64,000 nucleotides of DNA from positions 248,001 through 312,000 of the forward strand of contig LSRY02000007.1 of the NCBI GenBank assembly GCA_001643675.2, read 5' to 3'. Within the stretch, counting starts at the first letter, position 1; each line of letters starts with the position of its first letter. Under the pieces are notes generated by a model. That model ran no database searches and was not told the DNA's origin. It worked only from the letters and a program-made list of their open reading frames with translations. Below, in pieces: positions 35,535 through 63,271 of the stretch. Made by a program: the position numbers and the translations under genes. This DNA is from Monocercomonoides exilis PA203 (lineage: Eukaryota > Protista > Preaxostyla).

Positions 35535-38500
35535 TATAAAAAAGTCAACATTTTATTGTTATTTCTTTCAAATGAAAGTTTGTTGTTCACATGCGTGACC
35601 AATCAAAGCAACAAATCATTTTCAAAATCGTTCTGGTTATTAACACCCATATTTAAGAAAAACAAAAGTGCAGGAAAAATTGAAATTCATTCACGCATGC
35701 TGCCAATCATTCATCTTGTTGCAATTCTGAGCTTTTTCTTGAATATCAATGCTTTTGAAGACAACTCTTTATCTAATGCAAATGTTGAACCATTCCTTTT
35801 CAGATTATCAAAAAATGATGAATATTCATTATCCAGTCCAAAAGCGAATTATTCACAAAGCAACAACAGTGAAGATCGATCCACTCATTTTCGAGATGAT
35901 AAAGTGTCAGAGTTTTCATGTTTGAAAACTTCATTTTCATTGATGAACACATCAATAACTTTCTCAAAGTTGCAGTTGCAAACAAGAGGAGACACAAATA
36001 TTGTTGATGACACTTTATCCAATGTTGAAGTTCTCGGCTGTTTGATATTGTGTAACGATGAAAAGACAAATGGTCTGTTCAGAATTGTCCATGGAAGAGC
36101 ACTGTTCAACAACATGTCATTGAACGCAAAAAGTCAAAACAACCAAATTCCACAATTAGTGGCTTCTGAACAATCGGCCAAAAAGAGATGGATTGGGGAT
36201 GATTTTGAAGCAGTCATGCTGTCATCTTCAACATTTTCTGATTTGGTGTTTGAAAAGGCTCCGATTATTGAGTCCTCACATTCATCTTCTTTGTCCATTG
36301 ACAAATGTGTCTTCTCGAACATTTCATCCACTCAAAAGAAGGATCCATTTTGTTCAGAAATTTCATCTCTTCAAAAAGGAAACGGAGCATTCATCATTTC
36401 TGGATGTGAATTACATGATGTTGAAAATGTGTTTTATGGAGGAATTGGAGACAGCAATCATGCTTTGAATGTTTTCAACACAAGTGTGATGCATTGTGCC
36501 AGAACAATGAATTCAAGTTCAAGAGTGGAACTGAATGACGATCGAAGCTTTGAATACACCGAATTTGTTGATCAGCATGTCACTGATTATTCATCAATAG
36601 ACATAGGATTTCACACTTGTGGAGGAGCAATTTTGTTCAATGGCCCGTCATCTTCTTTGAAAGTTATGAGTTGCATTTTCACGGTTTGAATTGTTTTTGA
36701 ATTATTATTATTGTTGTTGATAACTTTTCCTTTCTCTCTTTTTCAACCTTGAATTTAGAATTGTTCCTGCAGCAGATGGGGAGGGGGAATTTGCGTTGTT
36801 GATTCTTCAACCACAAGAATAGGGAATTGCACATTTGATCATTGCATTGGAAAAAGAAATAATAGAAATGCAGGTTCACATGGAGGAGCAATCTTTCATG
36901 GCCAATCACAATGTTTCGACATCACTCATTCAATTGCAAAAAACGGACATACAACTGGATATGGAGGTGCTGTTTTATTAGCTTTAGGAAGTCCTTCCAT
37001 ATCAACTGAATGCAATTTTAATACTCTTGAAAATGGATCACCTATCCTTTTATTTAATATCACTTACGAAAACGAAACGCTTGATAGCACATATGGAAGT
37101 GCTCTGTTGGTAGAAATCAATCCACCAACTTTTTTTATCATGAGTGAATGTGTCTTTCAGAATTGCTCTGCAAAGAATTCAAATGGAGGAGGAATTTGGA
37201 TTAATGTCAGCCCACTTGAAATGAATACAAAGTTTTGTTTCTATTGCTTCTTCTTCAATAATTCTGCTTCACAGGCATCAGATGTTTATTTGAACGATCT
37301 TGATGAAAAGATAAAAGAAAGTCCGTTTGTTGAATGTTATTCATTGACAAGTGGAGAGAGCAGATGTGTGAGCTCCTCACAAGGAACAAAAAATGAGTGG
37401 CTTCCAAATGGATTTCTTGTGAGATATGTCATTCCAGATGGAGGAAACAACAATGCGCTCTGTGGGCTGACAGTTGAGGATGGCTGCAGCTCATTGAAAT
37501 TCACATTGGAAGACACATTGACAAAGAGCAGATGCAGAATCATGCTGATCGAGGGAATTTATGAGACGGCTGAATCAAATGGATATGTTGTGTTTGGGAA
37601 GAGAATTTCTATTCAAGGGAGAGGAAAGGATCTGACTCAACTGAATCCAGTCCAGGTTGAAGCAGATCAAGTGTTTCTGAGTGTTGATGATGGAATATGC
37701 AAACTGTCATCTTTGAACATTGTGTTTGACTCACATGAAAGTTCAAGACTGTTCCGACTGAGCTCCTCAAATTCTCAATTATTTCTTCAAAAGCTTGTTA
37801 TCAGCACCCCATTGAATCAGGAAGGCCTCCCCTCAAAAGAATATTTGAACAGTTTGTTTGAGGTGAATTTTGCCAACTTTCGAATGACTGATTGCATTGT
37901 CGAGAATGTGTTGTCCAAGGCCAGTCTCTTTCAAGAAACCTCTTCTGCTTCGTTATTGGTATCGTCTTCATCTTCTTCTCTTCCAAACAGTGATGAATCC
38001 TTTGTTGCCAATTCCAACTTTTCACATGTGACAAAAACAGAGGGAGATGGAGCAGTGTTGTCAAAGACAATCAGTGAGGGAGAGTCATTTTGTCTGTGGA
38101 ACACAACAATCGAGAACTGTGAGTGTTCGAGTGGGAGTGGAGGAGGGATCAGGATTGAGATGACATCATCCACAAGCACCTTCAGAATGGGATCCTCCTC
38201 GCTTCCAACCACACTCGATTCATGTTCATGCAGCAAGTGTGGAGGAGGATTGTATCTTTGGCTGGAGGATGGAACAACAGACTTTGTGATTTCATCAGTG
38301 AGTTTTGTGAATTGTGAGGCAGGGGAGGGAGGGAGAAATCTCTTTGTGAATGGGAGCAACATGAATGGTGAAACAATCAATTTGGAGAAGATTCGTATTT
38401 CACTGAATGGGCTGGGATTTGAAGAGTTGATGGGTTTTGATAGAAGTCTGAACGAAATCGGATTGTTTCCGTTGAATGTGTTTTGGGAGCCATTCCAACC

Positions 38501-41500
38501 ACCAGCACATGTTGGGGGAGCTGAAGTAAACTGGGTTTTTGATTCTTGTTTTTGTGGATTCAGCTTCTTCCCATGCCTGACAATAATGCATGCTGCTCAG
38601 CTCAGATATGGTTCATCACAAAGGAAGATTGTTGTTGGAGAGGGATATGAGCTGGATGAGGAGATGATGATGGATGAACCAGTTTGGAACATCTCATGTG
38701 AGCAAAAGGGAATGGCTGTTGATGTGCATGCACCACAAGCAGAGATCTCCAACCAATGGCTGGTGAGTGTTTCCACAGAATGCTCAATATACAACATCTG
38801 TTTCTCTCTTCCTTCTTCTCTCTCAAATGCCCACTCTTTCATCACACTCCCCACTTCCACTTCCTCTCTTACTCTCTCAAACTGCTCATCAATGAATTCA
38901 GCATCTGAGTCAGGGAGTGAGATTGGATTCTGCTTTGCGAGTGTGGTTGGAGGGGAGTTGAAGATGGAAATGTTTGAGACAAAAGGAGCAATGGTGTTTT
39001 CGTCACATTCGTTGATTGAAGGGAAGGGGAGCAGTTTTGTTGTGAATTGTGTTGAGAGTGTTTTTGAGGGAATCACAAAAGAGAATGGAGATGGAGCTTG
39101 TATTTGTGTTTGTGTTGAGGATGAGTCAAGTGCTCATGAGTCAGAAAAGAAACAACTGATAATTGACAACTGCACATTGAATGGATGCTGGGCAAAGGGA
39201 AGCAGAGCAAAAGGAGGAGGGTTGCATGTGTGTCTGAGAGGCAATGATGAAATGGTTGTGAATGGATCATCGAAATTTGATGGGTGCTGCGCAGGAAAGA
39301 GGGAAGAAGGAGAAGAGGATGGATGTGGAGGAGGAGTGTTTGTTCAAGTGGGAGATGCAGAGTGTTTGTTGAGCATTGAACAAGGAGTGCAGTTTTCGAA
39401 TGAGAAGGCGAACATTGCGAGAGATGGGAAAGATGTGTTTGTCTGGTGTGGGAATGGAGTTCAGTTGGAATTCTTGATCAACACATCTTCATTCGGGTTC
39501 TTTGATCATTCAATTCTCCCATCAGATGGAACAAGGCTGAATGGATGTGAAAATGGAGAGGATGATCCTGTCATTCCTCTGCATGTGTATTTGTGCTCCA
39601 TGCCAAGTCCAGTGATGGTTGATGGAAGAGAAGGAGTGGATCACACGAAGTGTGGATTTTCTTTGTTCTGTTGCCGATCGATTGATTTCTGTGCCAACAA
39701 GAGGGTTTCACAAGCAATCAATGAGATTGAAGTTGCATCATCTTCCTCAATCAACACACAAATCTCAGTGTCTTTGTTCCCTCTTCTTCTCTCATCATCT
39801 TCTTCCTCTTCAAAAGAAAGTGAAATAACTGTGAATGTGAGTGACACTGGAGAAGCAACACAAGATGGCTTGATTCGGTGCAGCAACAGTCTGTCCATTT
39901 CAGGACTCAGCTTTGTTCTTCCAAGAGCATTCCAGCAGAGCAGAAAGGCGTTTCTTCAATCTTCATCTGCACTCAGCCTTTCTATCTGTTCCATCTCCTT
40001 TGCTGAAGAACCAGATTCTGAGGGAATTACCATTTCTGTAATATTGGTGGAAAGGGGGGATCTGACGCTCAATGAATTCTCAATGAATTCAGAAGTTGAG
40101 TTTTCAGCATCATCTCCAATCTCAATAACCAATGGGGGAAACATCACAATCAAGAAATCGGAGATCCTTGGGATCAAACACTCAGGTGGTGATGGAGGAT
40201 GGCTGAGTGTGACTGGGATGGATGAAGGAGCCAGGTGGATAACAGTTGATAATTGCACAGTGAATTCATCGTGTGTCCAGGGAAACAACCTCAAGGGAGG
40301 AGGAATGCTGATTGAGCTGGCAAAGGAATGTGAGTTGAAGTGCAACAACACAGAAATGACTGGTTGTGGAGTTCCTGAAGAAGAAACAGAAACAGAAAGA
40401 GAAAGAGAAAGAGAGGTCGGTGGGAGAGGACTTGGTGGGGGTGTGTTTCTATCATTGGAGGATGAAGCAACTCAGTTTGTTCTCCTGGATATGAAGTTTG
40501 TGGGGTGCTGTGCCTGGAAAGGGAAGAATGTGTTTGTGAATGGGAGCTCTCTGGATGAGGTTGTGGATTCCACGCATTTCTGCTGGGAGATGAGTGAGAA
40601 GGAGAAGTCATCGATGGATGAGATGTGTGGGTGGGAGAGAGGCAGCGCTGGAGTTGGGTTTGTGATTCCGCTTGTGGTGTATCTGTGGAGCAACTTCAGT
40701 GGGAGTGGGTTTGTCGATGGGGAGGAAGGAGGAGACTTCAGTGGATGTGGATATGCTGCTGCTCCATGCAGATCCATCTCCCATCTCATCTCCCTCAAAT
40801 TCACCCCACTCCCTGGAAGTTCTTCTTCTTCTGATGATGATGATGGATTGTCCATCTCAGTGTCTCACATTTCCTCACTCACCTCATCCCTTTTCCTTTC
40901 ATCTTCTGTTGAATCAGAACAAATCTCAATGAAATTCATTGGGAAAGACAATGAGCCAGGGATTGGTGTGGGTGATGATCCAGTTGGAAATGAAGAATGG
41001 ACGATCCATTCGACCATCCATCTTTCATTTGAGGTTCTCTCCTTCCACATCCCAACAGCATTTGCCCACCACAGAACATTCATCAGATCTTCAACTTCCT
41101 CATCGCTTCTCCAAATGAAGCACTGCTCTTTCACCCCTCAAAGTTCAAGTGAGCCTGTCTCATTCACTTTGTTGAGTGTTTCAGAGGGAAGTCTGCTGAT
41201 TGACAACTGTTCACTGTCCTCGTTCTCAACCACTTACCCATTTCTCCTTGTTTCACTTCCTTCTCAGTCAATCACCCTTTCCAACATGACAGTCTCGAAT
41301 GTCTCGATATCTTCGTGCTCTCTAGTGACATTCGAAAGAACACCATCTCATCTGCCTGTGAATTCATCTGCTCACAATGAAGTGTCAGACAAGCCTTGTT
41401 GCTCCCTCCAAATCCTGTCATCCTCATTTGCCAACATCACATGCTCTGGTGACAGTGCAACCATTCTTTGCCTCGGAGTGTTCGATGCTGTGGAGAGTGT

Positions 41501-44500
41501 TGTTGAGAAGTGCACATTCAGCCGGTGTGTGAGCGAGGCGAGTGAAAGGGGAGGAGCACTGATGATGTGTGTGAAGAGCGAGGAGTCATTGGTGGAGGTG
41601 AGGCAATGCTCATTCACACTCTGCAAGTGCTCGACAGTGGTTGGGAGAGGAGGAGGAATGATGTTTGATTGTGTGGATCCCTCATTACCAGCACCAGCAC
41701 AGGATGGCTCATTGTTTCTCCCACTGAAGATTTCAGAGATCCGATTCACAATGAATGATGCACTGGTGGGGAAGGATATATTCATCAACTGTCAGTCGAT
41801 CGAGCAGCAGATCAACGAAACACTCTTTGCTCTCGACTTCACCCAGGAGTCGCTCCAGTCGAACAAGTCCATCTGTGCGAGTGATGCTGATGAGCAGGAT
41901 GTGGACTTGATCCCCTTGATCACCTTCTTGTATGCACCCCAGATCTTTGTGTGTCTCGATTCGGCAGACACTCGCCAGTGTGGATTGCCAACAAACCCCT
42001 GCCAGAGCATCTCATCTGCTGTTCACCACATTCAGCAAGGATTGCTCAACACCATTTTCATCAACACCTCATCCACCTTCCTCTCAGAGACAACTGTGCA
42101 TGGGCTGTCCATCCTGCCTTCAACAAAGCAGCAGGCAACAATCCAGCTGAGCATAACCATTCCACACACTGGAGATGCCCCAAGTGTGGTTCTGTTTGAG
42201 GAGGATTGCACAGTTCGCAACTGTTTAATATCATTTGCCTCTTCGTTTGAGTCAACACACTCAGCAGTATTCGCTGAATCATGTGGATCGTTGGAAGTGT
42301 CTCAATGCACATTCACAGCAGCCGATGCCTTGTTGGAGCTGGATTCACTTGTGATGGCTGTTTGGGGAGGAGTTCTGAAGATGAGCGAGACATCATTCAG
42401 CTGGCTGTCTTTTGCAAAACCCTTGCTTTTGTTTTCTGATGAATCAGAAATTGTGTTTTCACAATTGACTCTGGACTCTCTCGCATTGACAGCTGATGTT
42501 GTTGCAATTGGACAGAGTGCAACTGTCTCAATTGAAAAAATGAACTGTTCCAACATCTCATTGAACAAAGGCTGTCTGATATCAACGAACAAAGAAGAGC
42601 TGAACATGAATGGAAATGGAAGAAATAATGATGAAGGAAATGGAAGTCTCAGAATCTCTATTTCATCATTTGTGAATATTTCATCAAATGAGAACAACAA
42701 TAACAATGAGAGTGTTGTGAGGATTGAGAGTGACAAATCAAATGTGAATCTGATTAATTGCTCATTTTCTTATTGTCTGCTTTCAACTGAGAAAGGAAGC
42801 CAGTTGTCTGTTTCAGAAAGTTCGAATGTGATTGTTGTTTCGTGTCTGTTTGATGGCAAAGCAACAGATGAGCCAATTAGCCATCAGAAGAATAACGATA
42901 TGGGAGAAGATGAAGAAGAAAATGACAAAGAGCATAATCCGTTATGTGGTTGGAATGGATCAGTTGTGGATGTGAAGTCAAGCAATGTGACAATGAAGGA
43001 CACCACAATCAGCACCTCGAAGAAAGGAGGGCTTTCATTGTTTGGTGGAAGTGTGGAGATTGAGAAAGGAGAATTCACGAACAACAATCCATCGATTCAG
43101 AATTATCCATCAGCAAGAAGGAACATCCTGTGTGAAGGCTCTTCAGAATTGAGTGTTGTGAGTTTGAAGGGAGGTGATGGAACATTGCCAAATATCTCGT
43201 TGTGGATATTGGATGGAGGATGTTCATTGGAAGGGATTGCAGGAGAAAGGGCATCTCCCTTTTTCATCCCGAAGGTGGAGAGTGTGTCATCTGAAAAGTC
43301 AGGGGAGAAGGTGAATCTTGTGTTCAGAGGATCACTTCTCCTCCCTTGCAATCTCTCATTCGAAACAGTTGCAGCAGAAGGAGATGAGGAAGTGGTTGAA
43401 AAGCATTTGTTTGATGAAAGAGGTTTCATTTCAGAAGAAGAGGTTCATGGATCTGTTCCTGTGGAAACAATTGAAGGGGTGGCAAGTGGAGCAGAAGTGA
43501 GAGTGTGCATTCTGTTTGGAAATCCTTCTTCACCATCATCAACTGAATCCTTCATTCTGAAGAACAAGAGTACCTCAGAATCAAAAGGAGATGAAAGAAT
43601 TGTTGAAGGAGGAAAAGATGGAAAGTTGTCATGGATATTGATTGTTTGCATAGCAATTGTTGTTGCATTGTTAATTGTGTCAATTGTATTCATTGTTCGA
43701 TGGAGAAAGCAAAAGAGAAGAACAAGGGAATTAGAAGAGATTGTGAATGACACAGTGAGGAAGGATCCGAAGGTATTTGAGATGGTGACAATGGAGATGT
43801 CACCTGAGGAGCAATGGAGGAGAGCAGAAAGGGAGGCAGAGAAGAAGAATGAAGAAAGGATCAAGAAGAGGGTGTATGAGAATAGCTTGGGGCATTCCGA
43901 GTCATCAGAGCATTTGTTGAGTGAGAGTGGTTCGACTGAATACATCTTGGGAAGAGATTCAGATAAGATTCCAGAATGGGCATTGGAAAAAGTTGATGAG
44001 AAGGAAGTCGAGGAAGAGACAAGAAAGAGATCGCCATCGCCATCCATCTCATCCACTTCAACAACTGATTCAGATTCAACATTTGTTCGAGGAGAGGATC
44101 TGTGTCCAACCACCTCATCCATGTCGAATTTGGTGGATGCAATTGCCTGTTCATCAGTGTTTGAAAAGCTGATTGTGGATCTGCGAGATTCGCTGTTCAT
44201 GCTGCTTCATGGGAGGAATGAGAAGAAAGAGATGGCGATTGGCACTCTGAAGGAGAGAGAACACACAGCTGCCCAGGTGTTGTTCTGGGTGGCGAATGGG
44301 GCACTCCACTCATTTGAGAATGAAGAAGACGAGCTCTCCTCCCTTGCCAATCTGAGTCCTCACATTGTGTTGTTCTCGGAGCACATGATCATCTGCATTG
44401 CCAAGCATTCCGACTTCTCTTCAGATGATTCAGATTCCTCATCCATCTCCTCCGCCTCCACCATCATCACATCTTCCTCTGACTTCTCATCTGCCAACAG

Positions 44501-45586
44501 GAATGGTCGAGGCTCACCACCACCTTCATCAGCCTTTGAGGATGAGGATGACAACAGGAAGGAGTGCTTGAGGTGGAAGGCGCCTGAGCTGCAGATGAAC
44601 AAGAAGATGGGAGCAACAGAAAAGTCGGTGGTGTTCTCGATTGGGATGATGCTGTGGGAGTGCCTGACCCTGCAGATCCCATTTGGGGAGTATGGGGCAG
44701 TGGTGGCAGGGCAGAAGATTGTGAATGGGGAGAGGCCAGACATGAAGGGGGTTTCAGGGAACACATTTGAGGCAGTTGTGAAGAGCTGCGTGTCGGAGAG
44801 AGGGTGCGAGCGTGTGGAGCTGAATGTGCTGAAGAGAGAGTTTATCCAGCGCTTTCCTCCCGGCACAGTGATGGTGACGATGTCCGATGCGATTGGATAT
44901 AACGAGTTGTCAGAGGAAGAGGAGCTGAGTGTGTCAGCAGAGGCGAGAAAGCTGATTGAAAGCATGAACAAATGAGGAAGAAGAGATGGAGGAATTTCAA
45001 ATTAAATATTGTGTGAAATGTACTTTTTTTTATCTGTGGATGAAATGTGGGTTTTTTTTCAAAAATGCATTATCTATGGTTTTCTGTTTGTGGCGTGCTT
45101 GCTACGATTTTATTTGGCTTTTTGATGCTATTTCATTTATATTTTATTGAATTTTTGTGGACAAGAATGTTGACTCTTAGATCTCTATTTTATTATTATT
45201 CATGTTGAATTTTTCGTTATGAGCGGAATTCATTGAGATTTGAAATTTGATTGTTGAGAAAAGTGAATTCAAGTTTTGGAAAAATGAATAAACCTATTTT
45301 CTATTGGAATGATCATTTTTTTTTTCCCAAATAACATCATCACAAACAAAATAGAAATTGTTAATAAGGTCAGAATATGAAAGAGAAATTCTATTTCCAA
45401 ATACAACATTGCATTGAATGCAATCATTTCAACTGAAGCATTTGAAAATGGTTTCAAGATAAAAGATTTGTCGAATGACAATTCGATGAAGGAAATATCA
45501 ACAAATCTTCGAATTAATGAAAGAATATTATCAAAAAGAATTGCAATCACAGAATATCGAGCAAATACAAGTCTCCAATAGGGTAT

Positions 45587-49534: not shown

Positions 49535-52500
49535 ATGGCTGCGCAAGGTAATATGTCAAAAGATCTATTTCAAACAGTTCGTGACATTTCGTTTGAAAAG
49601 GTGCTTGAACATATAAAAGCTGGCAACATACTCTCAATACGTGATGTAAAGCTAATAGTGCAAAATGCTACAAGTATTTTTTCTTCTGAAGAAAATTGCG
49701 TGAATGTAAAAGATGAAAATATTCGTATTATTGGAGATACACATGGTTTTTCCATTTTTGTTCATTTGTTTGTGGAAACGTTTCGTAATTTATTTTCTTT
49801 AATTTAAAAGGAACACTGAAAAACATTGATGACATTTTTTCAACTGAAATATTAAATCAATATTCTCAAGTATTTCTTGGGAATTATGTCAATCGTGGCG
49901 AAAATTCATGTGAATGGCTTTTACTTCTTTATACAGCAAAAATATGCTATTCTTCAAAGACTTATCTTCTTCGCGGAAATCACGAATGTGAATTGATGTG
50001 CAGACGTTTTGAATTTTATAAGGAGTGCACTCAGAAATACAATGAAGAGATTTTTCAACTTTTCTTGAGTTCTTTTCATGCACTTCCTCTTGCTGCTGTC
50101 GCAAGTGATGGGAGATTCTTTTGCGTTCATGGCGGATTATCTCCACGTATTGGAACGGTTTATTTTTTGAATTGAGAATATTATATCATATATTAATTTT
50201 TTATTTTGTTTACTTGCTACTTTCAATTTAGTTGGAAGAACTGTCAAAAATAAACAGACACACAGAAATTGAAAAAGATGATGCCATTGCTGATCTTCTT
50301 TGGAGTGATCCACTTCCTTTGAGCTCTCCAATGACAGCTGAAGAGAAAAATGTTTATTTTCTGCCAAATACAAAGCGTGGGATTGGCTTTTTCTTTGGGT
50401 TTGTTCTGCTTTTATTTTCTTCAATTGTATCTATTTGCTGGATTATATTCTCTATTTCTATTTGGGTATTTTAATTTGAATTCTACCTTTTTATTTAAAA
50501 AAAAATATCCAATCTGAATGCTCATTTTTAGGCCTAAAGCGATTGATGCCTTTCTCGGAAACAACCATTTCATCGCTCTTATCCGCTCTAACCAATACTC
50601 TCAGCGTGGTCTGCTGTTGGCACACACAAAAAGCGCAGGGTTTCCGTCTGTGGTGACAATTTTCTCATCGCCGAATTTTCTGGGGCTGATGAAGAACAGA
50701 GGATACATTGCAATTGTGAAGGACCAAGTGTTGAGCTTCACGAAAATGGTGAGTGCACAAGCAAATTCAAATACTTCCGCTCAAACACCATCAACTCAAC
50801 AGTCTGCAACAGCAACAACAACAACAGCAGCAACAACAGCAGCAACAACAGCAGCAACAACAGCAGCAACAACAACAACATCATCATCATCATCATCTCA
50901 ATCTTCATCTCAGATGCCTCCATCTAATTCCAATTTAGTGAGTGAAAGGACTCTTCCTCAGTCAAATGAGCAAGGCATTGCATCATTCATCGAAGCCAAT
51001 TCACTCCACCGCCTTTTCCCTTTCGCAAAATCGCCTGTTGAATCTCTGCTCCGGCTGTATCTCCAAAACGTGCCTCAAAATGCACTTTCGTCTGGACAGC
51101 CTTCAGAAAACACACAACAAACAACGAAATCTTCGGAAGGGCAACAAAACACGTCTTCTGAAGCATCGCAGCAGACATACACAAATCCAAATGCACAAAT
51201 AAGCCAGCCGAATGCTGCTAATGTTAACAATACTCCTTTTTCTCTGCCTCCACCGCCGCCTCCTCCACCTTCTTCTGTATCTGCTGCAAGTGCTGCTACT
51301 TCTAATGCTTCTTCTTCTGTTCCTTCTTCTTCTTCTGTTCCTTCTTCTTCTTCTTTATCTTCTTCTTCTTCTTTGGTTGATTCTCTTCCACCGTATTTGA
51401 AGTGGTTTCTGCAGATGGCAAGCACGTTTGAAGGAGTTGCAGCACTCGATGCAATCAATCAGAGATGGCCAGAAGGAATCAAAGAGGAAATGAAAAGCGA
51501 AGAGAAAGAAGAGAAAGAGAAAGAGAAAGAGAAGGAGAAGGAGAAGGAGAAAGAGAAAGAGAAAGAGAAAGAGAAGGAGAAGGAGAAGGAGAAAGATAAG
51601 GTGAAAGAAAAAGAAAAAGAAAAAGATGAGAAAGATAAAGAAGTGAAAGAAAAAGAGATAGAGAAAGAAAAGATGAAAGAAAATGAGAAAGAAAAGGAGA
51701 AGGAGAAAGAGAAGGAGAAAGAAGAAAAAGAAAGAAAAAGAAGGGAGGACGAGGAAGGAGAAATGAGAAGAAAAGAAAAGAAAGAAAGAAAAGAAAAGAA
51801 AAGAAAAGAAGAAAACGAAGACAAAGAAAAAGAAAAAGACAAAGACAAAGAAAAAGAAAAAGAAAAAGAAAAAGAAAAAGAAAAAGAAAAAAAGATCCAA
51901 AAAGAAGACGAAGAAGCGAATATTGAGAAAGAAGAAAAGCAATCAGAAGCACGCAACACAGAAAAGGATGTTGCAATCCCTCAAACAGAAGAAAGGGACA
52001 AGAAAGCTGAAGAATCGAATGAAACAAGTGAAAATGCGAAGAAGGACGATAAAGAGAACAAAGAAACACAAAGTCAGAAAACAATTCTGACAACTGTGGA
52101 AAACATGCCTGAAGCAGCGAATGATAAAAATGAGAATGAAAAAAAAGAGAAAGAAGAGAAAGAAGAACAAAAGGAAGCAGAAGAAAATTCGAATAATCAA
52201 AACAAAACGAATGAAACAGCAGAACATTCAAATGAAATGGCAAAAGAACCAGAAAATTTGAAGAAAGAATCAAACGAAAAGGACAGCAATGCTTCTTCAG
52301 CAGACGCAACATCAGAAATTGCACAGGAAGAAACAGAGAACAACAACACTTCCATTCCATCGACATCACCTGAGATTCATTCAGAGAATGAAACAGCTGA
52401 GCAAAAGGATTCCAATCAACAATCAACAGATGAAAGAGAACAAACATCAATGACAGCAACAGCCTCAGAAACGTCAATTACAACAACTGCAACATCTTCT

Positions 52501-55500
52501 TCTTCTCCTTCTCCTTCTTCTTCTTCTGAGCCATTTTCAAGTGACACTAAAGAAATTCCACAATCTTCAGATACTTTGAATCCAACAGAGCCATCAAATG
52601 TATCAGAGCCACAAGAATCCCTCTCTTCTTCAGAGTCATCCAGCAATGCTCCTTCAACTTCTCCTTCAACGCCATCAACTTCATCTTCCTCTCCATCAAC
52701 TCCTCCTTCAACGCCATCAAGACAGCAGCCCACAACACCCACAACACCCTCTTCTCTCTCCTCCTCTCCTTTTCTGTCTCCCAAATTCTCCACTCCAAAA
52801 TCTCTTCCTCAGCCACACAGAAGAAGCCGGCTGCTGCCAAGCAGAGAGACTGAGCCGTCGCCAGTGAGAGAGGCAGCGATGCAGATGAGGAAGCACAACT
52901 TGGCGATGAAAGTGCTGATTGCACAGAAGGAGAGAGAGAGGGAGATGGAGAAGAAGAAGGACGAGAAGGAGAAGGAGAAGGAGAAGGAGAAGGAGAAGGA
53001 GAAGACGAAGAAGAAGAGAAAGGAGGAGAAGGAGGAGAAAGAGAAAGAGGAGAAAGAGAGAAAAGAAGAGAAAGAAAAGGAAAAGGAAAAGGAAGAAGAT
53101 GAAGGTGAAAGTGATTCCAAGGATGTTAAGGAGGAGAAAGAGGAAAAAGAAGAAAATAAAAAAGAAGAGGAACAAGATGACAACGATGAGAATGAAAGAA
53201 AAGAGGAAGAAAAAGATAAAAATGCTGCAGCTGAAGCACAAAATGAAGTTAACAAGACAAAAATATCTGAAAATTCGAAGGATTCTTCAACAAATAAAGA
53301 AAAAGAGCAAAGCTCATCTCTTTCTGAGAAAGAAAAAGAAGGCACAGCATCAACAGAAGTTACAAAAAGCAGAACCGAATCAGCAGAAAAACCAAATGAA
53401 AGTGAAGGCAAAGAAAAAAGAGAAGAAAAAGAAAAAGAAAAAGGAGAAGAAAAAGAAGGAGAAAAAGAAGAAGACCTGGATTCTGATGTGATTGTTGTTG
53501 GCAGCTTCTTTTCATCTGCCAAATATCTCCGAAAAAGCTCTCTGCAGAAACAAGGCGATTTGACACGTGGAAAAAGAAATCATTCAAAAGAGAAAGGAAA
53601 AACAGAATTGAAATCAAAGAAAAACGAGAAAAGAAGCAAAAATAGTGTTCCAATTGAAGAAGTTATTGAGGTTGTCAGTGATGATGAAGCAGCATCAGAA
53701 CAGTCAGAAAATAAAGTGGAGAAGACAAAGGAACAAGAAACATTGAATAACAATGACATTTCTGTTGGATCTGAGAAGAGCGTGAATGAAGATGGAATGA
53801 AAGAAAAAGAAGAAGAGAATGAAAAAACAAAGCAAGCAATTGAAGAGAAAGATAAAATGGAAGTTATAGAGAAAGAAAAGAAGGAGAAGGAGAAAGAGAA
53901 AGAGAAAGAGAAAGAAAAGACTGAAGAAAAAGAAAGTGAAAAAGGAGAAGTTCAATCAAAAGCAAATGAATCTGAATCAAAAATAGAAGAGAGCAAAAAA
54001 GAAATAGAAAAAGAGGAAGAAAAAGAAAAGGGAAAAGGGAAAGAAAATGAAAAAGAAAAAGATGAAAATATAGCGAAGACTTCAGCAGAAACGAAAAATG
54101 AAAAGAAAGAACAAGACAAAAATGAAAGAGAAAAGGAAAAAGTTAAAAAAGAGAGAAAGAAAGAGAAAGAAAATGGAAAGAATAAGAAGAAGAGTGAGAG
54201 TAAAAGAAAGACAAAGAAAGAAGAAAAAGTTGAGAATAATGAAGATGATAGGAAAAAGGAAAAGGAAACGAAAAATGAACAAGAAAAGAAGGAAGGAAAA
54301 GAAGAAGCTGAAAAGAAAGAAGGAGAAAAGAAAGGTGATGTTGAAATGAAAGAAAGAAAGGAGCAGAAAAAGGAAGAGGAAGTTGAAAAGAAAGACGAGA
54401 AAATGGAAGAAGAGATGGAAGAGAAAGAAGAAGAAATAGAGAAGGAGAAGAATGAAAAAGAAGAAAAAGAAGTAAAAGAAAAGGAAGAAAAAGAAGAGAA
54501 GAAGAAAGAGGGAGATATGAAACCATCTGTAGAATCAAAGAAAAGCAAAAATGAAGTCAAAAGAAAAAGACCATCAACAAGAAAAAGTAAGAAGAAAGAA
54601 GAGAAAAATGAAAAGAAAGAGAAAGAGGAGGAAGTGAAGAATAATGAAATGAACAAAGAAGAAGAAGAAAGAGATGTTGAGGAGATGAAAGAGAAAGAGA
54701 AAGAGAAAGAGAAGGAAGAAAATGAAGAGAAAAAGAATAACGAAATAAATGAAAAAGAAAAGAATGCTGAGAAAGAGGAGGAACCGAAAGTGGAAGAAAA
54801 GGAAGAAGAAAAAAGAACTATTATGAAAGAAGTCGAAAAGAAAGACGAAACAATTCAAACTGAAACAAAATTTGTTCGTTTTCCTCTTCCTCTGCCAATT
54901 CCATCTTCATTTCTGGCTGACTCATTTTTGGATGATTTGTTCTCATTCGCTCATCCAACATCATTTGCTTCTTGTGCAAATGCAAAACATACCACTCATC
55001 AATTGAACAATGAAAACAAACAAAAAGGTTCTGCTATTAATCATTCTAAAGAAGAAGCAGCAGCAAAAGAAGCAGAAGAAAAAGAAGAAGAGAAAGAGAA
55101 AGAAAAAGAGAAAATCCCTGAAAAAACAGAAGAACCAAAGAAATCCAAAACTCATCCACTGTTTTCACCAACTTCGCCTCTTCTTCCGACACCTGCAGAT
55201 GCCAAATCGAAGAGCACAAAGCAAAAAGATCCATTTGCCCCACCAGTGAGAGAAGTGAGACAGACACACTCAACTCACAAGAGAGAAACAGCATCGTCTG
55301 CAGACATTCACGATGCACCTCAGCCACTTGCTGTAATTTCATCATCATCATCATCATCTTCTTCTTCTTCTTCTTCTTCTCTCTCATCACCCTCTCCTTT
55401 CATTCCTCTCTCCTTCTGCTCTCCTTCCTCCTCTCGTTTGGTGTCTGTGCTGGCTGTCGTCACCGAATGCACCCTTCCAAAGCCAACACGCACAAAAGAC

Positions 55501-58500
55501 GGACACTTCATGCAAATTGGCGAAGTCTCATCTTCCTCCAAGTCAAATTCTGACTTCCATAAATTGCTTTCATCTTCTTCATCTTCATCATCTTTCTCCT
55601 CTTCTTCAGCTTCTTCATCTTCTTCAATGCGATTCAACCTCCATCAGGATACCCAACAGTCGTGGAATCAGCTGTTCACTGAGCAGAAAAGAAACGATGA
55701 CTGGTTTGTGACGCTCAGCATAACTGATCCATCCATCTGCCCTTCGCTTCTCCCTCAGCCTTCTGCTTCTGCTTCTGCTTCTGCTTCCTCTTCATCCCCC
55801 TCTTCTTCTCAAGTCTTCTCCTCTCAAAATCTCCAATTCTCCCAATCAATCACTCCAGGCCTTTCACAAGATCTTACTTCCACACAGCCATCCACAAATG
55901 TCTCTTCTCTTCCTCTTCTGTCGTCTCGCCGCCTTGTCGTGAACATGTTCTTCCAAAAGCACGAAATCCAGTTGATGAAGCAGCTGTCACCAGGAAGTGT
56001 TGTGTGCATACAGGACATGCGAATACAGAAGCACCGGAATGAAGTGCAAGGTGTCATCAACACGAAATGGAAGACATCAAAAGTGGCTGTGATTGACAAG
56101 GAGAAGATGGAGGATGAGTGGAGGAAGATGAGTCAGATGAAGCAAAAGACAGCCAATGAGGGAAAAGGCGATAAAAAGGATGAAAAGGGAGAAAGTGCAT
56201 CTTCTTCTTCTTCCTTCTCCTCTTTTTCTTCTTCTTTGAATACTGCATCATCTCTCTTGCATTCACTATCAAATCCATCTCCTCTTCTGTTTGCATCACA
56301 AGCTGACTTGGAAGCAGTGCTTCGTGTTGTCCATCCACAATTCCCATCTTCTGCTGTTCCTCTGCTGCTGTCTCTGATCGCATTCGCTTCTTCTCTCCTT
56401 CCGCTTTGTTGTGTCAGACACGCTGCTTATTTGCATTCTGTCGAAGACACAAAGAAACTTGCATTGTATCTCTCACAAAACTTTTTGGAAGGCAAAAGAA
56501 CAGAAAATGATTCGAAGGGAATGATGGCAATTGACAACAGGGAAGAAGAGAAAGCAAACGAAAAGACAACAAATGAAAATGAAGCCATTTCAACAGAAAC
56601 AGTAAATGCAGAAGTTTCTTCAGAATCCAATCTCTTTTGGCGCAATGAAGGAACGTCCATTCAATCCATCAGAACTTCATCTGATCATTCATCTTCATTG
56701 CCATTTGCTGCTCCCTTTTCTTCTGCGTCGTATGCCTCTCTCTTCCCTTCACTCCCTCCTCCGCCTGTGTGTGTCGATGCAGCTGGCATTGTGGTTCGTG
56801 TGAGCTTCCCTTTCATCTGCCTCTTCGATCCAACCTCTCCCTTTGGACACGAACTGGCTGTTGTCGAACTTCCAACTTCTTCTCCTGTCGAAAGAGATTT
56901 CTCGTCTGCTGTTGCATCCTGTGCTGTCGAAGGAACATGCTTGAGACTTGTCAATCTTGAAGTGTCGCTGTCAAAGAAGTATCTTAACTCTTCTGTGAAT
57001 GTGGAAGGTAAAAATAACAAAGAAACAAGAAAGTCAAATGAAGGAATGAAAATTGTGAATGAAAATCAAAGAAAAGCATTGTCACACACTTCAAAGAGCA
57101 CGCGATTTGCAGCTTCTTCATCGTCTCTTCTCTTCTCTTCATCGTTATCTTCTTCTTCTTCTTCTTCTTCTTCTTCGCTTTCAAGTATTTCTCCAATGAG
57201 CCAAACTGAATTGGAGTCATCTTACAGAGAAGCCGTTTCTATTGCTCGACAGCGTATTATTGCATTGAGAATAAAATGTGCTCATCTTCAAAGAGAAAAA
57301 ATAAAACAGACAAGAAAAAAAGGAAATGCACAAGAAATGGAAATTGAAGATGCAGATGAAATGAATAATTCGAAAAAAGAGAAGATTGAAAATAAATCCA
57401 AAGAAATGGAATCTGAAGAAAATATTGTTGAAACATCCAATCAACAGCAAGTGGAGCCAAATAAAGTTAAAGAATTATCCAATAAAAATAATGCAATCGT
57501 TAATTCGGTTGAAAAGGATTCATCATCATCAGTTCAAAATGACTCGATGGAAAAAGAAGAAAAGTCTGAAAGAAACGCCATTTGTCAGCAGACACAAACA
57601 TCTGCAAGAGACATTCCATTCACAAAACTTGATCCAATTCAATTTCCTTCTTTGGAAGGCGCATCAAACAACCAGTTTGTCGATTCACTTCCGATTTTGC
57701 CAAAAGAAATCTCACAACAAATTGAATGTGATCCATTGTGTTATGATGTCATTGATCTTTCTTCTGTTTCTGCCTCTGCTTCTGCATCCTCATCATCATC
57801 ATCTTCTTCTTCTTCCATTCTTCCACCAGTTCTTTACACTTTCTCTTTAACTGACTCGTCTGCTTCATTGATCAACCTCCGTACTCTTCTTCTCATTCTC
57901 TCTCATTCCCCTTCTGCTTCATCTGAGTTTCCAGTCAAAAAAGAAGAAGAAGCACAAGTATTTTCTGAGAAGCCATCTGAAGAACTCCAAAAAGAATTGT
58001 TTACACCTTTTTCTGCATCTTCCCTTTGGACAGAATCTGAAAGTGTTTCTCTTCCATCGTGTGAATATTCCCTTATGAATGTGTTTGAAGGAGAAGACGA
58101 TGAGCTGTTTTCTGAGATTGAAGAAGAACATAAATCTTCTCCTGCTTCTTCGGAGCTTTTATCTTCTTGCAATGAAAAAGAAGGTAAAGCAGAAGAAGAA
58201 ACAGTATCAGGTCCTGCTTCATCTTCCTCTTCCTCTGAATCCAATGAGAATGCTGATAAAAGTGCATCATCACAATCATCAACAACTTCCTCTGCTCTTC
58301 ACGAAGAATCCCAAAACAATGAGCTGACACAACTTCCAGCTGACTATTTGACTGAGACTCAGATGGAAACACAGCTTCCGCCAAAGATTCCTTCTCCTCG
58401 GCCTTCTTTGAATGCGAAGTGGGAAGCAGCGATTCTTTCTGTGAAGAAGAGCATCCAACAAGAGCTGCCATACACATTCATTGAGCTCAATGATAAGGAG

Positions 58501-60492
58501 AAGGACAAAGAAAACACACAAGAGAATGAAGCATCTGAGGAGACGAAGAGCCAAGAGCAAGACAATGGAGCAATTGACAACAAAGAAATACACAAGAGAT
58601 TGGAGTTGGCGATTGTGAAACACAATTTTGAGAGTATTTTTGATGGCAGCTTTGAGGAATTTGTGAACAATCTGAGATCGAAAAAAGACAACGACAAAAA
58701 GGAAGATCCTGAAAATGAATCGCAACAAGCTCAAACAAAGAAAAAGAAAAAGTTGAAGACTGGAGATGAAGCAGAGCAGAGCCAACATTCATCAGAAGAC
58801 AAAGAAAAATCCTCATCTGACTCAACTTCCTTTGATTACAATGTTTTATCTCTTTCTTCCATCATTGAGACGCCTCAATTAAAGCGTGTATATCTCTCTC
58901 TTCTTCGATACTATCTATTCCCAATCACTTCAATTGTGCTTCCTGACACACTTCACTCTTCTGCTTCTGCCTCTTCATCAACAGAGCCTTCATCATCTTC
59001 ATCTTCTCCTTCTTCTCCTTCTTCTCCTTCTTCTCCTTCTTCCTCTCCTTCTTCACAAGACTCCACAGCTTCTGCTGCTGAGATACTCACATTTCACATA
59101 CCACTCACAAAACTGATGCCTTTCTCGCAATCGTTGCTGAGCCAGCCTGAAAGTGCCAGCATTTCTCAGACAAGCACAAAAGAGCAGGCAGCTGAACCAG
59201 CAGCGTTTGACAAGGAATCAACGATTGTCACCTCCCAGTCATCTGAGCCATATGTCCTCACACCCTCTGCTAATTCTGCCTTCAGCCTTCTTCCTCCTCT
59301 CCAGCGCTTGTCTTCACCTGCAGCCCCGCCTCTGTCTATGATTATGTCGCAGCCTCTTTCATACTCTCAGTCATCTCCTCCGTTTTCTGCTTTTTCTCCT
59401 CCAACTCCAGCCATTTCTCAGACACTTTCACAGCTGAATTCTGCATCTACGCTGTGCTTTGTGGTCAAAGCAGCCATTCAAGAAGTTCGACTCCATCATC
59501 TTCCCTCTGCTTCTGATCAGCCAATTAACAATTCGACTATTCCTTTTTGCTGTCTGCCGTTCTGCCTAAAATGCAATCAGCTCTGCCAATGGATAGATGC
59601 AGATGATGAAGTTGGGAAAGAAAACAATGAAAAGAATGAACACGAAAGAGAATCGGGTGAATCAAACGTGATCGTAAAAGCAAGTGCTGAACCACAAGTT
59701 CGAAGGAAAAGAGGAAGGCCACGAAAAACTGACAATAATTTAAGCGAAGCTTCAAAAGCGGATAAAAGAGATAATTCTTCTGATGCCTCGATGAAGCCAA
59801 CAAAGAGAAGGAGGAGCCAAGTTATTGATTCATCAATAAAAACGACTTCATCATCTTCTTCATCTTCTTCATCATCTTTATCAACATCTGAAGAAGAGCT
59901 TTCTACAAAGAGAATGATGAATACCAATTCCTCTCCCCCAAACAGTCAAAACACAAAGAAATACAAACAATGCTTCAAATGTCCTTCTTGTAATTTGCAG
60001 TTCCATCCAACGTCGATGTCAGAAGAAGAGGAAAAGAATGTTAAATGGGAATGGAACGTATCATTTCTGTTGTATGATCCATATTCTATTGATCTGTTTC
60101 CTACGTCTGTGCAAAGTCATTCTTCGACTGTATCTTCTCAGGCAGAACCTGAAGCAAACTCATCACTAAATAATGAATTTTCGACTCTTCATTCATTGAA
60201 ATGTTCTCTTTCTTCTGATTCTGCATCTCTTTTCTTTGGCGCACAGCCAACAAACCTCTTCACTTCAACAAGCACCGCCAATCGTGTTGCATTTTGCTTC
60301 CAGAAATTCCATGTCTTTGATTTTGGAGACGCTCTTCATTCTTCTTTGGACAGAGACAGCCGCAAAGCATCAGCACATTCTGGTGGCTGCAGCTGCAGGG
60401 CTTGTTTGGCCAGGCGCCCCAGGTCGCTCTTCGGCATCTGCCACTCAGACTCCTCTTATTCCATTATAAGCACCTCGGTTTCTATGAAATGA
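49535..60492 (+). CDS. Fusion: calcineurin A-derived pseudophosphatase + charged linker + POT1/TEBP-alpha-like OB-fold module, ~3561 aa; exons 49535-49745, 49811-50157, 50232-50398, 50532-60492
   Basis: Three GT-AG introns assemble GDTHG, GNYVNRG, RGNHE, VHGGLSP, DLLWSDP and GFPSVVTIFSSPNF. The last exon is one stop-free 9.96-kb frame holding the end of the phosphatase domain, an autoinhibitory-like [15 protein letters not shown] and three POT1-like OB segments. Confidence 0.8.
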
Positions 60493-61244: not shown

Positions 61245-63033
61245 TCAATTGGGTAATTTGATCCTGGTCCTGAAGTTATACTGCTTCCGAGTTAAATGGG
61301 AAGAATTGTATGAAGAATACTCGCGGAGCGAGTCTTGAGAAGAATGTGAAGTGTGACATGGAGAATATGTGATAAAACAATTGGTAAAAGTTGAGGGAGA
61401 GTTTGATGAATTTGAGAGATGTGAAGTTGGTGATAAAGTCATGCATCCTGATGAAGAAGGTATACACGAATATGCTACCTCTTTTCCAACTTCATCATCG
61501 TCCTCTGTCAGAACTTGTTCCAATGGCAACGGTGATTCCTCATTAAAAATGTCACTTCCATCAATGCTGGAACTACTTCCTTGATCATCCATTGATTCGT
61601 GCATGGAATCTGCTCCAAAAGCGCTTAAATCGCCAGGCGCACAACTTCCACTTTCGTCGCAATGAAGATTATATGATGGAATATCGCAGAAGTTTCCAGA
61701 TTTCTGAGATGATTGTGATGAACCGCAATCCTCTTTTCTCAAAAACAGGCAGCTTCCTCGTTCAGAAGAATCATCAATCAATGATTGAGAAACATAGTCA
61801 GATTTCTCATCTTCTAAATTTTGCCCTTCTGATGAATCGCTTTTTTCGTCTTCGCATTCAGCCTCTTCTAAATAATCATCGTTGCTTATATTTTCTTCGT
61901 CCATACACTGCAGTTGGAACATATATAAGTGAATATAACACATATAAAAAATAATAGAATCGTTCCAATTCATGAACGAAAGTTGAAACCCAAATAAACA
62001 AAAATAAACTATTAATTTTGAACAGAATGCAAAAACACACTCCAGGAGAGGTTGTATAATTGGGTGTTGGAGGAGTATGATTAAGTTCAACCTGACCAGA
62101 AAGAGGTGAAGTTTCTGTGACTAACGATGAAAATTGAGGAGGCGAAGGATTTCGAAATTGAGGATGATCATCTGATGGCGAAGAAGGTGAAATCCTTGGT
62201 GGAGTCATTGCATTTTCAGGAGGATAGTATGAAACCAGAGGTGACAAAGGTGATGATAAAAGAATATCTTTGCAACTTTCACAATAAGATTGAATAGTTT
62301 GATCATCAGCTTTTCGATCTCTTGAAAAAGATAAGCAAAGAAATCCTTCTCTTGGAAAAATACTTGTAAGCGGCATAATATCTTCTTCAGAGAAGAAGAG
62401 TGTAAAATTTAATGCTGTCAAAATCTGAATTTCGTTATGATATATTCTAGCGGGCTCAAGATTCAATACTCGGGCAATATTTCCAGATTTTATTTGATCA
62501 TCATGCAGAGCTTTACAAGAAATTAAAATGCATAGTATCATTAAATAAAATAGTTCCGAATCTTGAGTAATTGAAAGAACTGGTCCTGCAATCCTCATGT
62601 ATCGATGAAGAATAATTAATGAAGTCAAAAATAATTCCTCATCCAATTTGAAGAAAGAAATCATATTTCCAAGGTGCGAATACATAACCGTTGGATCATA
62701 TGATGGAAGAAGTGTTATCAGCAACATTGACGCACGTTGTGCAAGGACAGACATTGTTAATTGCGGAGAAAATAAATCACCTTGTTGTGGTTGGATAAAA
62801 CGCTCATAAAAAAAATTGCGCGGAATCATCATCAAATTATCTCTTGGGACAGATACGGCTGGATTGGGCAAAATCAAATTTGGGGAATTAGTGGGCTCAA
62901 AGCGGACAAGGTCAGTTTGAGGGCTCTGATTGTGCCAGTGGAGCATCTTCGAAGAAAATGATTTCGTTGGATATGTTTGCACATATGTATTCGAAGCGAA
63001 AACAGTTTTTGAAGATGGATTACTGGTGATCAT
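61245..63033 (-). CDS. PHO80/Pcl-like cyclin with acidic Ser-rich tail; exons 63033-62041, 61907-61245
   Basis: Cyclin box FLTSLIILHRYM..LCILISCKALHDD..IARV..IYHNEIQILTALNFTL. GT-AG intron 61908-62040 joins SPG to CMDEE in phase 0. Confidence 0.75.
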
Positions 63034-63271
63034 AAACAGCCTCAAAAATGTACCCTTCGCGCAAGAAGAACAATATAATGGTTTAAAATCCCACTATTTG
63101 ATAAAATCTTAACTTTGTTAAGTCCGTTATTATTGATGAATGTTAACGTATGACTGGTGATGGATGAAATGCAATATTGGTTTTACAGATACTGCTAAAA
63201 AAATTTTTTTCGTTTATGTTTTTTATGGTTAAATGCCATAATTTAATTGTCAATAACTATTTGTATTTGAT

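What the first reader, a model, noticed from the sequence alone, without database searches (positions are those of the whole stretch)
49729..50680. The calcineurin domain looks like a conserved pseudophosphatase
Seen: GDYVDRG is GNYVNRG (49879-49899), RAHE is RSNQ (50584-50595) and SAPNY is SSPNF, while GDxHG, GNHE, HGG and LLWSDP are intact. Known: the first Asp of GDxVDRG and the His of RAHE bind the metals, and the second Asp pairs with the catalytic His. Inference: the conservative D>N and H>N changes remove catalysis but keep the fold and the phosphate-binding Arg. This fits a phosphoprotein reader or trap rather than random decay.
Basis: partly seen in the sequence, partly recalled or inferred. 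Interest (0 to 1): 0.8.

Follow-up and report, generated by a model that had tools for sequence, protein, structure and literature searches.

The report
Calcineurin-like domain with a disabled active site
A gut protist encodes a calcineurin-type phosphatase domain in which three invariant catalytic residues are replaced. The rest of the fold is kept, and the domain sits at the front of a giant protein that ends in a probable telomere-binding module. It is most likely an inactive scaffold, but its conservation in other species could not be tested.

Summary
A four-exon gene (49535-60492, + strand, 3561 codons) starts with a PPP-type phosphatase domain. It reads GDTHG, GNYVNRG, GNHE, HGG, LLWSDP, RSNQ and SSPNF. 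Exons 3 and 4 match calcineurin A far better than PP1 or PP5.

All ~28 other PPP loci read at these positions in the same genome keep D..DRG and GNHE. The genome is very probably Monocercomonoides exilis, which also has two canonical calcineurin A genes. Of 54 columns that are at least 90% conserved among the nearest database PPPs, this domain differs at six. Four of the six lie in the catalytic centre: D118N, D121N, H281N and Y311F. This looks like a targeted loss of catalysis on a preserved fold, not general decay.

"Conserved" is not shown. Three word-index protein searches (exon 4, exon 2 and the tail's paralogue), one exhaustive HMMER search (exon 2) and a metagenome scan found no orthologue. 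Reads could not be consulted.

The regulatory tail (CnB helix, calmodulin site, autoinhibitor) is not detectable. The domain is joined in one reading frame, through a ~1350-residue low-complexity linker, to a POT1/TEBP-like unit. That unit has a stand-alone paralogue without a phosphatase domain.

VPS29, with the same bridging Asp-to-Asn change, is the best precedent. I therefore favour a scaffold or docking role. "Phosphoprotein trap" remains speculation.

The joined spliced protein was never built or searched; all work was exon by exon.

The parts
49535..49745 (+). Exon 1: N-terminal part of the phosphatase domain, ending in GDTH + first base of Gly (GDxHG intact, D90 and H92 equivalents kept)
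   Evidence: Translation. The sequence shows donor GT at 49746. G67, D68 and H70 agree with the conserved columns.
49746..49810 (+). Intron 1 (65 nt, GT..AG, phase 1)
   Evidence: Read from the sequence. Splicing restores the 20-residue spacing between GDxHG and motif II seen in calcineurin. Left unspliced, the frame stops at 49807.
49811..50157 (+). Exon 2: GNYVNRG (49879-49899; D118N, D121N, R122 kept), GNHE (49975-49986), HGG (50128-50136)
   Evidence: Pfam Metallophos 55.1 bits against a cut-off of 21.5. Aligned to calcineurin A at 1e-24 to 3e-27.
50158..50231 (+). Intron 2 (74 nt, GT..AG, phase 0, 16% GC)
50232..50398 (+). Exon 3: LLWSDP (50295-50312) and the second phosphate-binding Arg (50376-50378, R254 equivalent)
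   Evidence: The full-length match is to calcineurin A only; PP1 aligns over just the first 27 residues.
50399..50531 (+). Intron 3 (133 nt, GT..AG, phase 2)
   Evidence: Read from the sequence. The Gly codon GG|G is restored across the junction.
50532..50748 (+). Start of exon 4: last part of the phosphatase core with RSNQ (50584-50595; H281N, E282Q, A280S) and SSPNF (50665-50679; Y311F). It ends after the strand equivalent to beta-14.
   Evidence: Calcineurin A at 1.6e-8 against PP5 at 0.08. Alignment to the genome's own canonical calcineurin ends here.
50749..54798 (+). Low-complexity linker of about 1350 residues, rich in S, E, K, T and A, in the same open frame
   Evidence: Zero stops in this frame, against 36 and 97 in the other two forward frames between 51500 and 55300. 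No Pfam family. No calcineurin regulatory segment detectable.
54799..60492 (+). POT1/TEBP-like unit (OB folds, C-terminal CxxC pairs), collinear with a stand-alone 1417-aa paralogue on contig C11; stop codon at 60490-60492
   Evidence: Collinear BLASTP segments. Pfam POT1 20.4 bits, below the 29-bit cut-off. ESM Atlas nearest clusters are POT1, score 0.93. A low-confidence model of the paralogue's OB1 hits hSSB1, Oxytricha TEBP-alpha, S. pombe Pot1 and human POT1.

Best explanation
The N-terminal ~330 residues of a 3561-residue protein form a calcineurin-A-type metallophosphatase fold that has lost its catalytic machinery. Three residues are replaced by Asn: the Asp that bridges the two metals (D118), the Asp that positions the general-acid His (D121), and one His ligand of metal M2 (H281). 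In addition, Y311 is Phe, the acidic substrate pocket is neutralised (E282Q, probably E237P), and the CnB-binding, calmodulin-binding and autoinhibitory segments are not detectable.

The M2 site is left without any carboxylate ligand. Metal affinity, and with it phosphoester hydrolysis, should therefore be lost or reduced by orders of magnitude.

The fold itself is maintained. It most likely serves as a non-catalytic scaffold or docking module, tethered by a long disordered linker to a POT1-like single-strand-DNA-binding unit.

Shown: the substitutions, their uniqueness within the genome, the preserved structural columns, and the single reading frame. Inferred: loss of activity, the scaffold role, and the telomere context.
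For: - Motifs and codons are as described, aligned to solved calcineurin A.
- This is the only PPP locus read in this genome with changes in motif II.
- 48 of 54 highly conserved columns are kept, and 4 of the 6 differences lie in the catalytic centre (Fisher p = 0.012).
- Its similarity to database PPPs is comparable to that of the organism's own canonical calcineurin in exon 2, and only moderately lower in exon 4.
- All three introns have GT-AG ends, and the frame stays open for 3561 codons.
- VPS29 has the same bridging Asp-to-Asn change. It binds metal with Kd above 250 uM, shows no phosphatase activity and acts as a rigid scaffold (PMC3101248).
- PP1 D95N is used as a loss-of-function mutant (bioRxiv 10.1101/2023.12.21.572751).
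- Kinetoplastids have PPP-type pseudophosphatases (PMC2994645).
Against: - No orthologue was found, so selection on the altered state is untested.
- No activity, metal or expression data exist.
- Asn can ligate metals: N150 does so in all PPPs, and PP1 H248N keeps M2.
- Yeast Ppn2, classed as a pseudophosphatase by motif, is active (PMC13216928).
- PP1 without M2 could not be purified, so a metal-free PPP core may be unstable.
- The conserved-column test is modest (p = 0.07 if Y311 is not counted as catalytic).
- The reference set was chosen by similarity to this very exon.
- The joined domain was not folded.
Confidence: 0.55

Rival explanations
1. Phosphoprotein reader or natural substrate trap. 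The domain still binds phosphorylated Ser/Thr through R122, R254, H151 and residual metal but cannot hydrolyse it. It would recruit or shield phosphoproteins near the POT1-like unit.
For: Both phosphate-binding Arg residues, the general-acid His, and D90, H92, N150 and H199 are kept. Engineered calcineurin D90A and PP1 H66K are used as substrate-trapping forms (PMC13022171; PMC10066265). The same idea has been proposed for kinetoplastid kSTPs (PMC2994645).
Against: In PPPs the phosphate is held largely by the two metals, and their shared carboxylate ligand is gone. The acidic pocket that recruits basic substrates is neutralised (E282Q, probably E237P). VPS29, the natural case with the same Asp-to-Asn change, is not a phospho-reader. 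There are no binding data.
Confidence: 0.15
2. It is still an enzyme: a phosphatase or other phosphoesterase with an unusual all-neutral metal site and changed substrate or metal preference.
For: Seven of ten catalytic residues remain, including the general acid and both Arg. Asn is a competent metal ligand, and PP1 H248N retains M2. Ppn2 carries a non-canonical motif II and is active.
Against: The bridging Asp is described as present in all active enzymes of the fold, and VPS29 with Asn at this position is inactive. D95N in PP1 is a loss-of-function allele. Here three hits are combined.
Confidence: 0.15
3. Recent neutral decay: a domain that became dispensable after fusion and is starting to erode, with no function of its own.
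For: Conservation of the altered state is unproven. Each change is a single-base substitution. A fungal-looking calcineurin copy on a metagenome contig carries the same N..N pair with signs of breakage nearby.
Against: There is no stop, frameshift or broken splice site in about 330 codons and three introns. Only 2 of 43 non-catalytic conserved columns are changed. The regulatory tail is already unrecognisable while the core is well kept, which suggests a long period of constraint on the core.
Confidence: 0.12
4. Artefact: assembly or base-calling errors, or a wrong gene model.
For: The assembly is nanopore-based (PMC8767320), and reads could not be checked.
Against: Five separate substitutions in different codons, all in frame, are not the indel-type errors typical of nanopore data. 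The assembly was polished with ten rounds of Pilon. The exon junctions restore canonical PPP spacing.
Confidence: 0.03

Closest known systems
Calcineurin A (PPP3C / PP2B catalytic subunit)
   Same: Same fold and subfamily signatures. Exons 3 and 4 match calcineurin A specifically. GDxHG, GNHE, HGG, LLWSDP, both phosphate-binding Arg and the GFPS...SxPN region are kept.
   Different: D118N, D121N, H281N, Y311F, E282Q. No detectable CnB-binding helix, calmodulin site or autoinhibitory segment. It is fused to a giant tail. The genome has separate canonical calcineurin A genes.
VPS29 (retromer subunit with a metallophosphoesterase fold)
   Same: Natural replacement of the metal-bridging Asp by Asn in a preserved fold. 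VPS29 has low metal affinity and no activity, and serves as a protein scaffold (PMC3101248).
   Different: VPS29 is a small, distant member of the superfamily, conserved across eukaryotes. The domain here is a bona fide PPP/calcineurin-type domain in one lineage, and its scaffold role is only inferred.
Kinetoplastid kSTP PPP-type pseudophosphatases
   Same: PPP-family proteins with mutated catalytic motifs, proposed to be substrate traps or scaffolds (PMC2994645).
   Different: They are a different lineage, not of calcineurin type, and no fusion to a DNA-binding module is described. I did not compare sequences.
Engineered inactive or trapping PPP mutants (calcineurin D90A and H151Q; PP1 H66K, D95N and H248K)
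   Same: Single changes at the same set of residues abolish activity while the fold and substrate docking persist.
   Different: Those are laboratory alleles. This is a natural triple change, and H248N alone in PP1 does not remove the metal.
POT1 / TEBP-alpha telomere end-binding proteins (for the C-terminal unit)
   Same: OB-fold topology, sub-threshold Pfam POT1 matches, and paired CxxC motifs near the C-terminus.
   Different: Below curated thresholds, with no PDB sequence match. From memory, no known POT1 carries an N-terminal phosphatase-like domain. A literature search for POT1 with pseudophosphatase found nothing.

Membership tests
PPP / Metallophos superfamily (PF00149) | Significant match to the family profile | tested here: met
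   Exon 2 scores 55.1 bits against a cut-off of 21.5. There were 8285 PPP hits in the exhaustive search.
PPP / Metallophos superfamily (PF00149) | Three signature motifs GDxHG, GDxVDRG, GNHE | tested here: not met
   GDTHG and GNHE are present. Motif II reads GNYVNRG, with both Asp replaced.
Calcineurin A subfamily | Catalytic core closer to PP2B than to other PPPs | tested here: met
   Exon 4: calcineurin 1.6e-8 against PP5 0.08. Exon 3: calcineurin 0.004 over its full length against PP1 0.5 over 27 residues. Exon 2 does not discriminate.
Calcineurin A subfamily | CnB-binding helix, calmodulin-binding segment and autoinhibitory domain after the core | tested here: not met
   BLASTP to the genome's own canonical calcineurin stops at the end of the core. 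A phmmer search of 50932-51522 against PDB, which includes full-length calcineurin, gave no calcineurin hit. Sequence methods only, so a very diverged helix cannot be excluded.
Calcineurin A subfamily | Complete set of metal-binding and catalytic residues | tested here: not met
   D118N, D121N and H281N.
Pseudophosphatase (operational class) | Phosphatase fold with substitutions at residues essential for catalysis | tested here: met
Pseudophosphatase (operational class) | Lack of catalytic activity | not testable with these tools
   Needs an enzyme assay. The precedents cut both ways: VPS29 is inactive, while Ppn2 is active.
Pseudophosphatase (operational class) | Altered state retained under purifying selection | tested here: inconclusive
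   No orthologue was found. The indirect column test favours constraint on the fold.
POT1 (PF02765), for the C-terminal unit | Profile match above the curated cut-off | tested here: inconclusive
   20.4 bits here and 24 bits in the paralogue, against a cut-off of 29. Supported by the Atlas features and a low-confidence fold match.

The most novel reading that the evidence does not exclude
An oxymonad has turned a calcineurin catalytic domain into a catalytically dead, selectively maintained module and fused it to one of its two POT1-like telomere end-binding proteins. This would create a telomere protein that docks or traps phosphoproteins, or calcineurin partners, at chromosome ends. The combination of a PPP-type pseudoenzyme with a telomere-capping protein has not been described.
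Probability: 0.2. Interest if true: 0.8.

Novelty: new variant of a known kind. Interest (0 to 1): 0.5.

Why it matters
Pseudoenzymes of the PPP family are rare. A 2026 survey states that none is reported in humans (PMC13216928), and the kinetoplastid ones are uncharacterised.

This is a natural calcineurin-type domain with a triple, active-site-focused substitution and an otherwise preserved core. It would give a clean system to ask what a PPP fold does without catalysis. Its fusion to a POT1-like unit suggests an unexpected link between phosphatase-like docking and chromosome-end biology in a mitochondrion-less protist.

If the domain proves active instead, it would show that the "invariant" bridging Asp can be dispensed with.

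Tried and rejected
- **Orthologue hunt, all negative.**
  - The exhaustive HMMER search with exon 2 found nothing above 55% identity.
  - The word-index search with exon 4 inside the giant ORF found nothing.
  - The word-index search with exon 2 reached at most 53% identity.
  - The metagenome contig scan reached at most 57% identity.
  - The search with the POT1-like paralogue found nothing.
- **Joined protein.** All evidence is exon by exon, so there is no structure model of the domain.
- **Pfam on the 3319-residue tail:** nothing.
- **Rfam on the window:** nothing.
- **Profile of the two OB1 regions against PDB sequences:** nothing.
- **Calcineurin regulatory helix** suggested by a neighbouring note: not recovered.
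- **A first regular-expression count of motif II** missed variants lacking "RG". The column-based recount found several N..N variants in other PPPs, so the double change is rare but not unique in nature.
- I then worked by coordinates only.
- **Classic PP1 mutagenesis paper:** looked up by an id recalled from memory and not held.

Full report
**Observation**

The stretch 49535-60492 on the + strand is one gene of four exons.

| Part | Coordinates | Note |
|---|---|---|
| Exon 1 | 49535-49745 | |
| Intron 1 | 49746-49810 | 65 nt |
| Exon 2 | 49811-50157 | |
| Intron 2 | 50158-50231 | 74 nt |
| Exon 3 | 50232-50398 | |
| Intron 3 | 50399-50531 | 133 nt |
| Exon 4 | 50532-60492 | runs to the stop codon |

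All three introns begin GT, end AG and are very AT-rich. This fits the intron statistics published for the organism. The two Asn codons of motif II are AAT and the Asn of RSNQ is AAC.

**Which family**

- Exon 2 matches Pfam Metallophos at 55.1 bits against a cut-off of 21.5.
- Against solved structures, exon 2 matches calcineurin A and PP1 about equally.
- Exon 4 matches calcineurin A at 1.6e-8 and the next family, PP5, only at 0.08.
- Exon 3 aligns over its whole length only to calcineurin A.

The alignments put the altered residues opposite human calcineurin D118, D121, H281, E282 and Y311. They also show D90, H92, R122, N150, H151, H199 and R254 retained. In a gapped loop, E237 appears replaced by Pro. 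Together with E282Q, this neutralises the acidic pocket that recruits basic substrates (PMC13022171).

**Is it more than chance?**

The window lies on contig C69 of an 82,301,135-base assembly in 101 contigs. Those figures match the nanopore assembly of Monocercomonoides exilis (PMC8767320), the organism other agents of this scan also named.

A six-frame search of that genome with exon 2 found 31 PPP-like matches. I fetched them and read the residues aligned to the motif positions. Every one that covers motif II keeps D-x-x-D-R-G, and every one keeps GNHE. The window's gene is the only exception.

The genome also has canonical calcineurin A on contigs C35 and C5. These carry GDLHG, GDYVDRG, GNHE, RGHE, SCPNY and a recognisable CnB-binding helix region. 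The two copies are 86.7% identical in DNA.

**Decay or targeted loss?**

- There are 54 such columns, and the gene agrees at 48.
- The six differences are D118N, D121N, H281N, Y311F, a Pro-to-Ser at 49951 and a Gly-to-Asp at 50280.
- So 4 of 11 catalytic-centre columns are changed, against 2 of 43 others (one-sided Fisher p = 0.012, or 0.07 if Y311 is not counted).
- Piece by piece, its similarity to the reference set is comparable to that of the organism's own active-looking calcineurin in exon 2 and somewhat lower in exon 4.

Both tests share a caveat: the reference set was selected by similarity to this exon 2. With that caveat, the pattern is of a preserved fold with a selectively dismantled active site. 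There is no stop, frameshift or damaged splice site.

**What the substitutions should do**

This part rests on literature and inference.

- The bridging Asp is the only carboxylate ligand of metal M2. With Asn there and Asn in place of H281, M2 would be held by Asn, Asn, His and Asn.
- VPS29 is the natural precedent. Its central bridging Asp is Asn, metals bind with Kd above 250 uM, no phosphatase activity is found, and it is a rigid scaffold (PMC3101248).
- PP1 D95N, the equivalent of D121N, is used as a loss-of-function allele.
- Against a simple reading, PP1 H248N still binds M2, and PP1 that cannot hold M2 could not be purified (PMC10066265).
- Yeast Ppn2, a motif-defined "pseudophosphatase", is active (PMC13216928).

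I therefore rate [quoted passage not shown] as most likely. Residual or altered enzyme activity and a phospho-trap role remain as rivals.

**Regulatory tail**

After the strand equivalent to beta-14, the sequence runs into low-complexity Ser/Thr/Ala/Gln. BLASTP against the genome's own canonical calcineurin stops at the end of the core. A PDB search with 50932-51522 found no calcineurin. A neighbouring first-stage note proposed a retained CnB helix and autoinhibitory motif. I could not recover either.

**What it is attached to**

Exon 4 is a single 3324-codon open frame.

- Between 51500 and 55300, the other two forward frames hold 36 and 97 stops while this frame holds none. The continuity is therefore not a by-product of purine-rich composition.
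- From about 54799 to the end, the protein is collinear with a 1417-residue single-ORF protein on contig C11.
- That paralogue has no phosphatase domain, and no PPP match lies near it.
- Both paralogues give sub-threshold Pfam POT1 matches: 20.4 and 24 bits against a cut-off of 29.
- The ESM Atlas features place the OB1 region nearest to POT1 clusters, with a score of 0.93.
- A low-confidence AlphaFold model of the paralogue's OB1 (pLDDT 53) has OB topology. It hits hSSB1, Oxytricha TEBP-alpha, fission-yeast Pot1 and human POT1 at E of 1e-4 to 5e-3.

This is suggestive, not proven. An in-frame ATG near 54817 sits where the paralogue starts, so an internal start giving a stand-alone POT1-like product cannot be excluded.

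**Conservation**

No orthologue was found.

- The exhaustive HMMER search of 1.84 billion representatives with exon 2 gave no hit above 55% identity.
- The word-index searches with exon 4 in its giant frame, with exon 2 and with the POT1-like paralogue gave nothing closer.
- The metagenome scan reached at most 57% identity.

The "conserved" of the finding's title therefore remains untested, and no dN/dS could be computed.

Among the nearest database PPPs, a column-based recount found a few other domains with Asn at both motif II positions. These are P0087, P0015, P0154 and P0157. One of them is a fungal-looking calcineurin copy whose other motifs are canonical but whose GDxHG region is not readable. 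The N..N state thus recurs in nature, in at least one case possibly in a decaying copy.

**Limits**

All searches were exon by exon, and the domain was not folded.

**Verdict**

The domain is very probably a disabled calcineurin-type fold kept for a non-catalytic role.
- Its conservation and any phospho-reader function are open.
- It is a new variant of a known kind (PPP-type pseudophosphatase), made more interesting by its fusion partner.

Noticed in passing
L055:1507-5760 (genome contig C11:205006-209259, minus strand): A 1417-aa single-ORF paralogue of the C-terminal ~1900 residues of the window's giant protein. It is POT1-like, with OB folds and C-terminal CxxC pairs, but has no phosphatase domain. 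The organism therefore has two POT1-like genes, and only one is fused.
   Followed up: partly
L015 (C35:163759-166974) and L014 (C5:1331276-1334491): Two canonical calcineurin A genes with intact catalytic motifs and a CnB-binding helix region. They are 86.7% identical in DNA over 2.7 kb including introns, which indicates a fairly recent duplication.
   Followed up: partly
window 54817 (in-frame ATG): An in-frame Met lies where the stand-alone paralogue's protein begins. An internal transcription or translation start could yield a POT1-like product without the phosphatase-like domain.
   Followed up: no
Genome-wide, e.g. C28:141403-141531, C33:130968-131177, C22:749889-750065, C47:812745-812927: At least seven PPP-like matches lie inside giant open frames of 2715-8292 codons. 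All keep the D..DRG and GNHE residues. Phosphatase domains embedded in giant proteins seem common in this genome.
   Followed up: no
L056:2005-3008 (ENA metagenome contig): A fungal-looking calcineurin A gene with GNYINRG (the same double Asp-to-Asn) but canonical RAHE, SAPNY and CnB helix. Its GDxHG exon is not readable, so it may be a decaying or RIP-mutated copy.
   Followed up: partly
P0087 (829 aa, ENA): A PPP protein with GNYVNHG, intact GNHE, HGG and RGHQ, and a long tail that looked to me, by eye only, like EF-hands and a kinase-like end. It is another natural N..N variant of unknown origin.
   Followed up: no
window 50790-50900: An ACA/GCA-type trinucleotide repeat that encodes a Thr/Ala run followed by a Ser run, directly after the phosphatase core. 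It lies where canonical calcineurin has its CnB-binding helix.
   Followed up: no
window 13750-20823, 24309-30623 (-), 37107-44975: Three more giant open frames (2357, 2104 and 2622 codons) in the same window. An AAA ATPase lies at 1255-2799 and a cyclin on the minus strand at 61876-63045.
   Followed up: no
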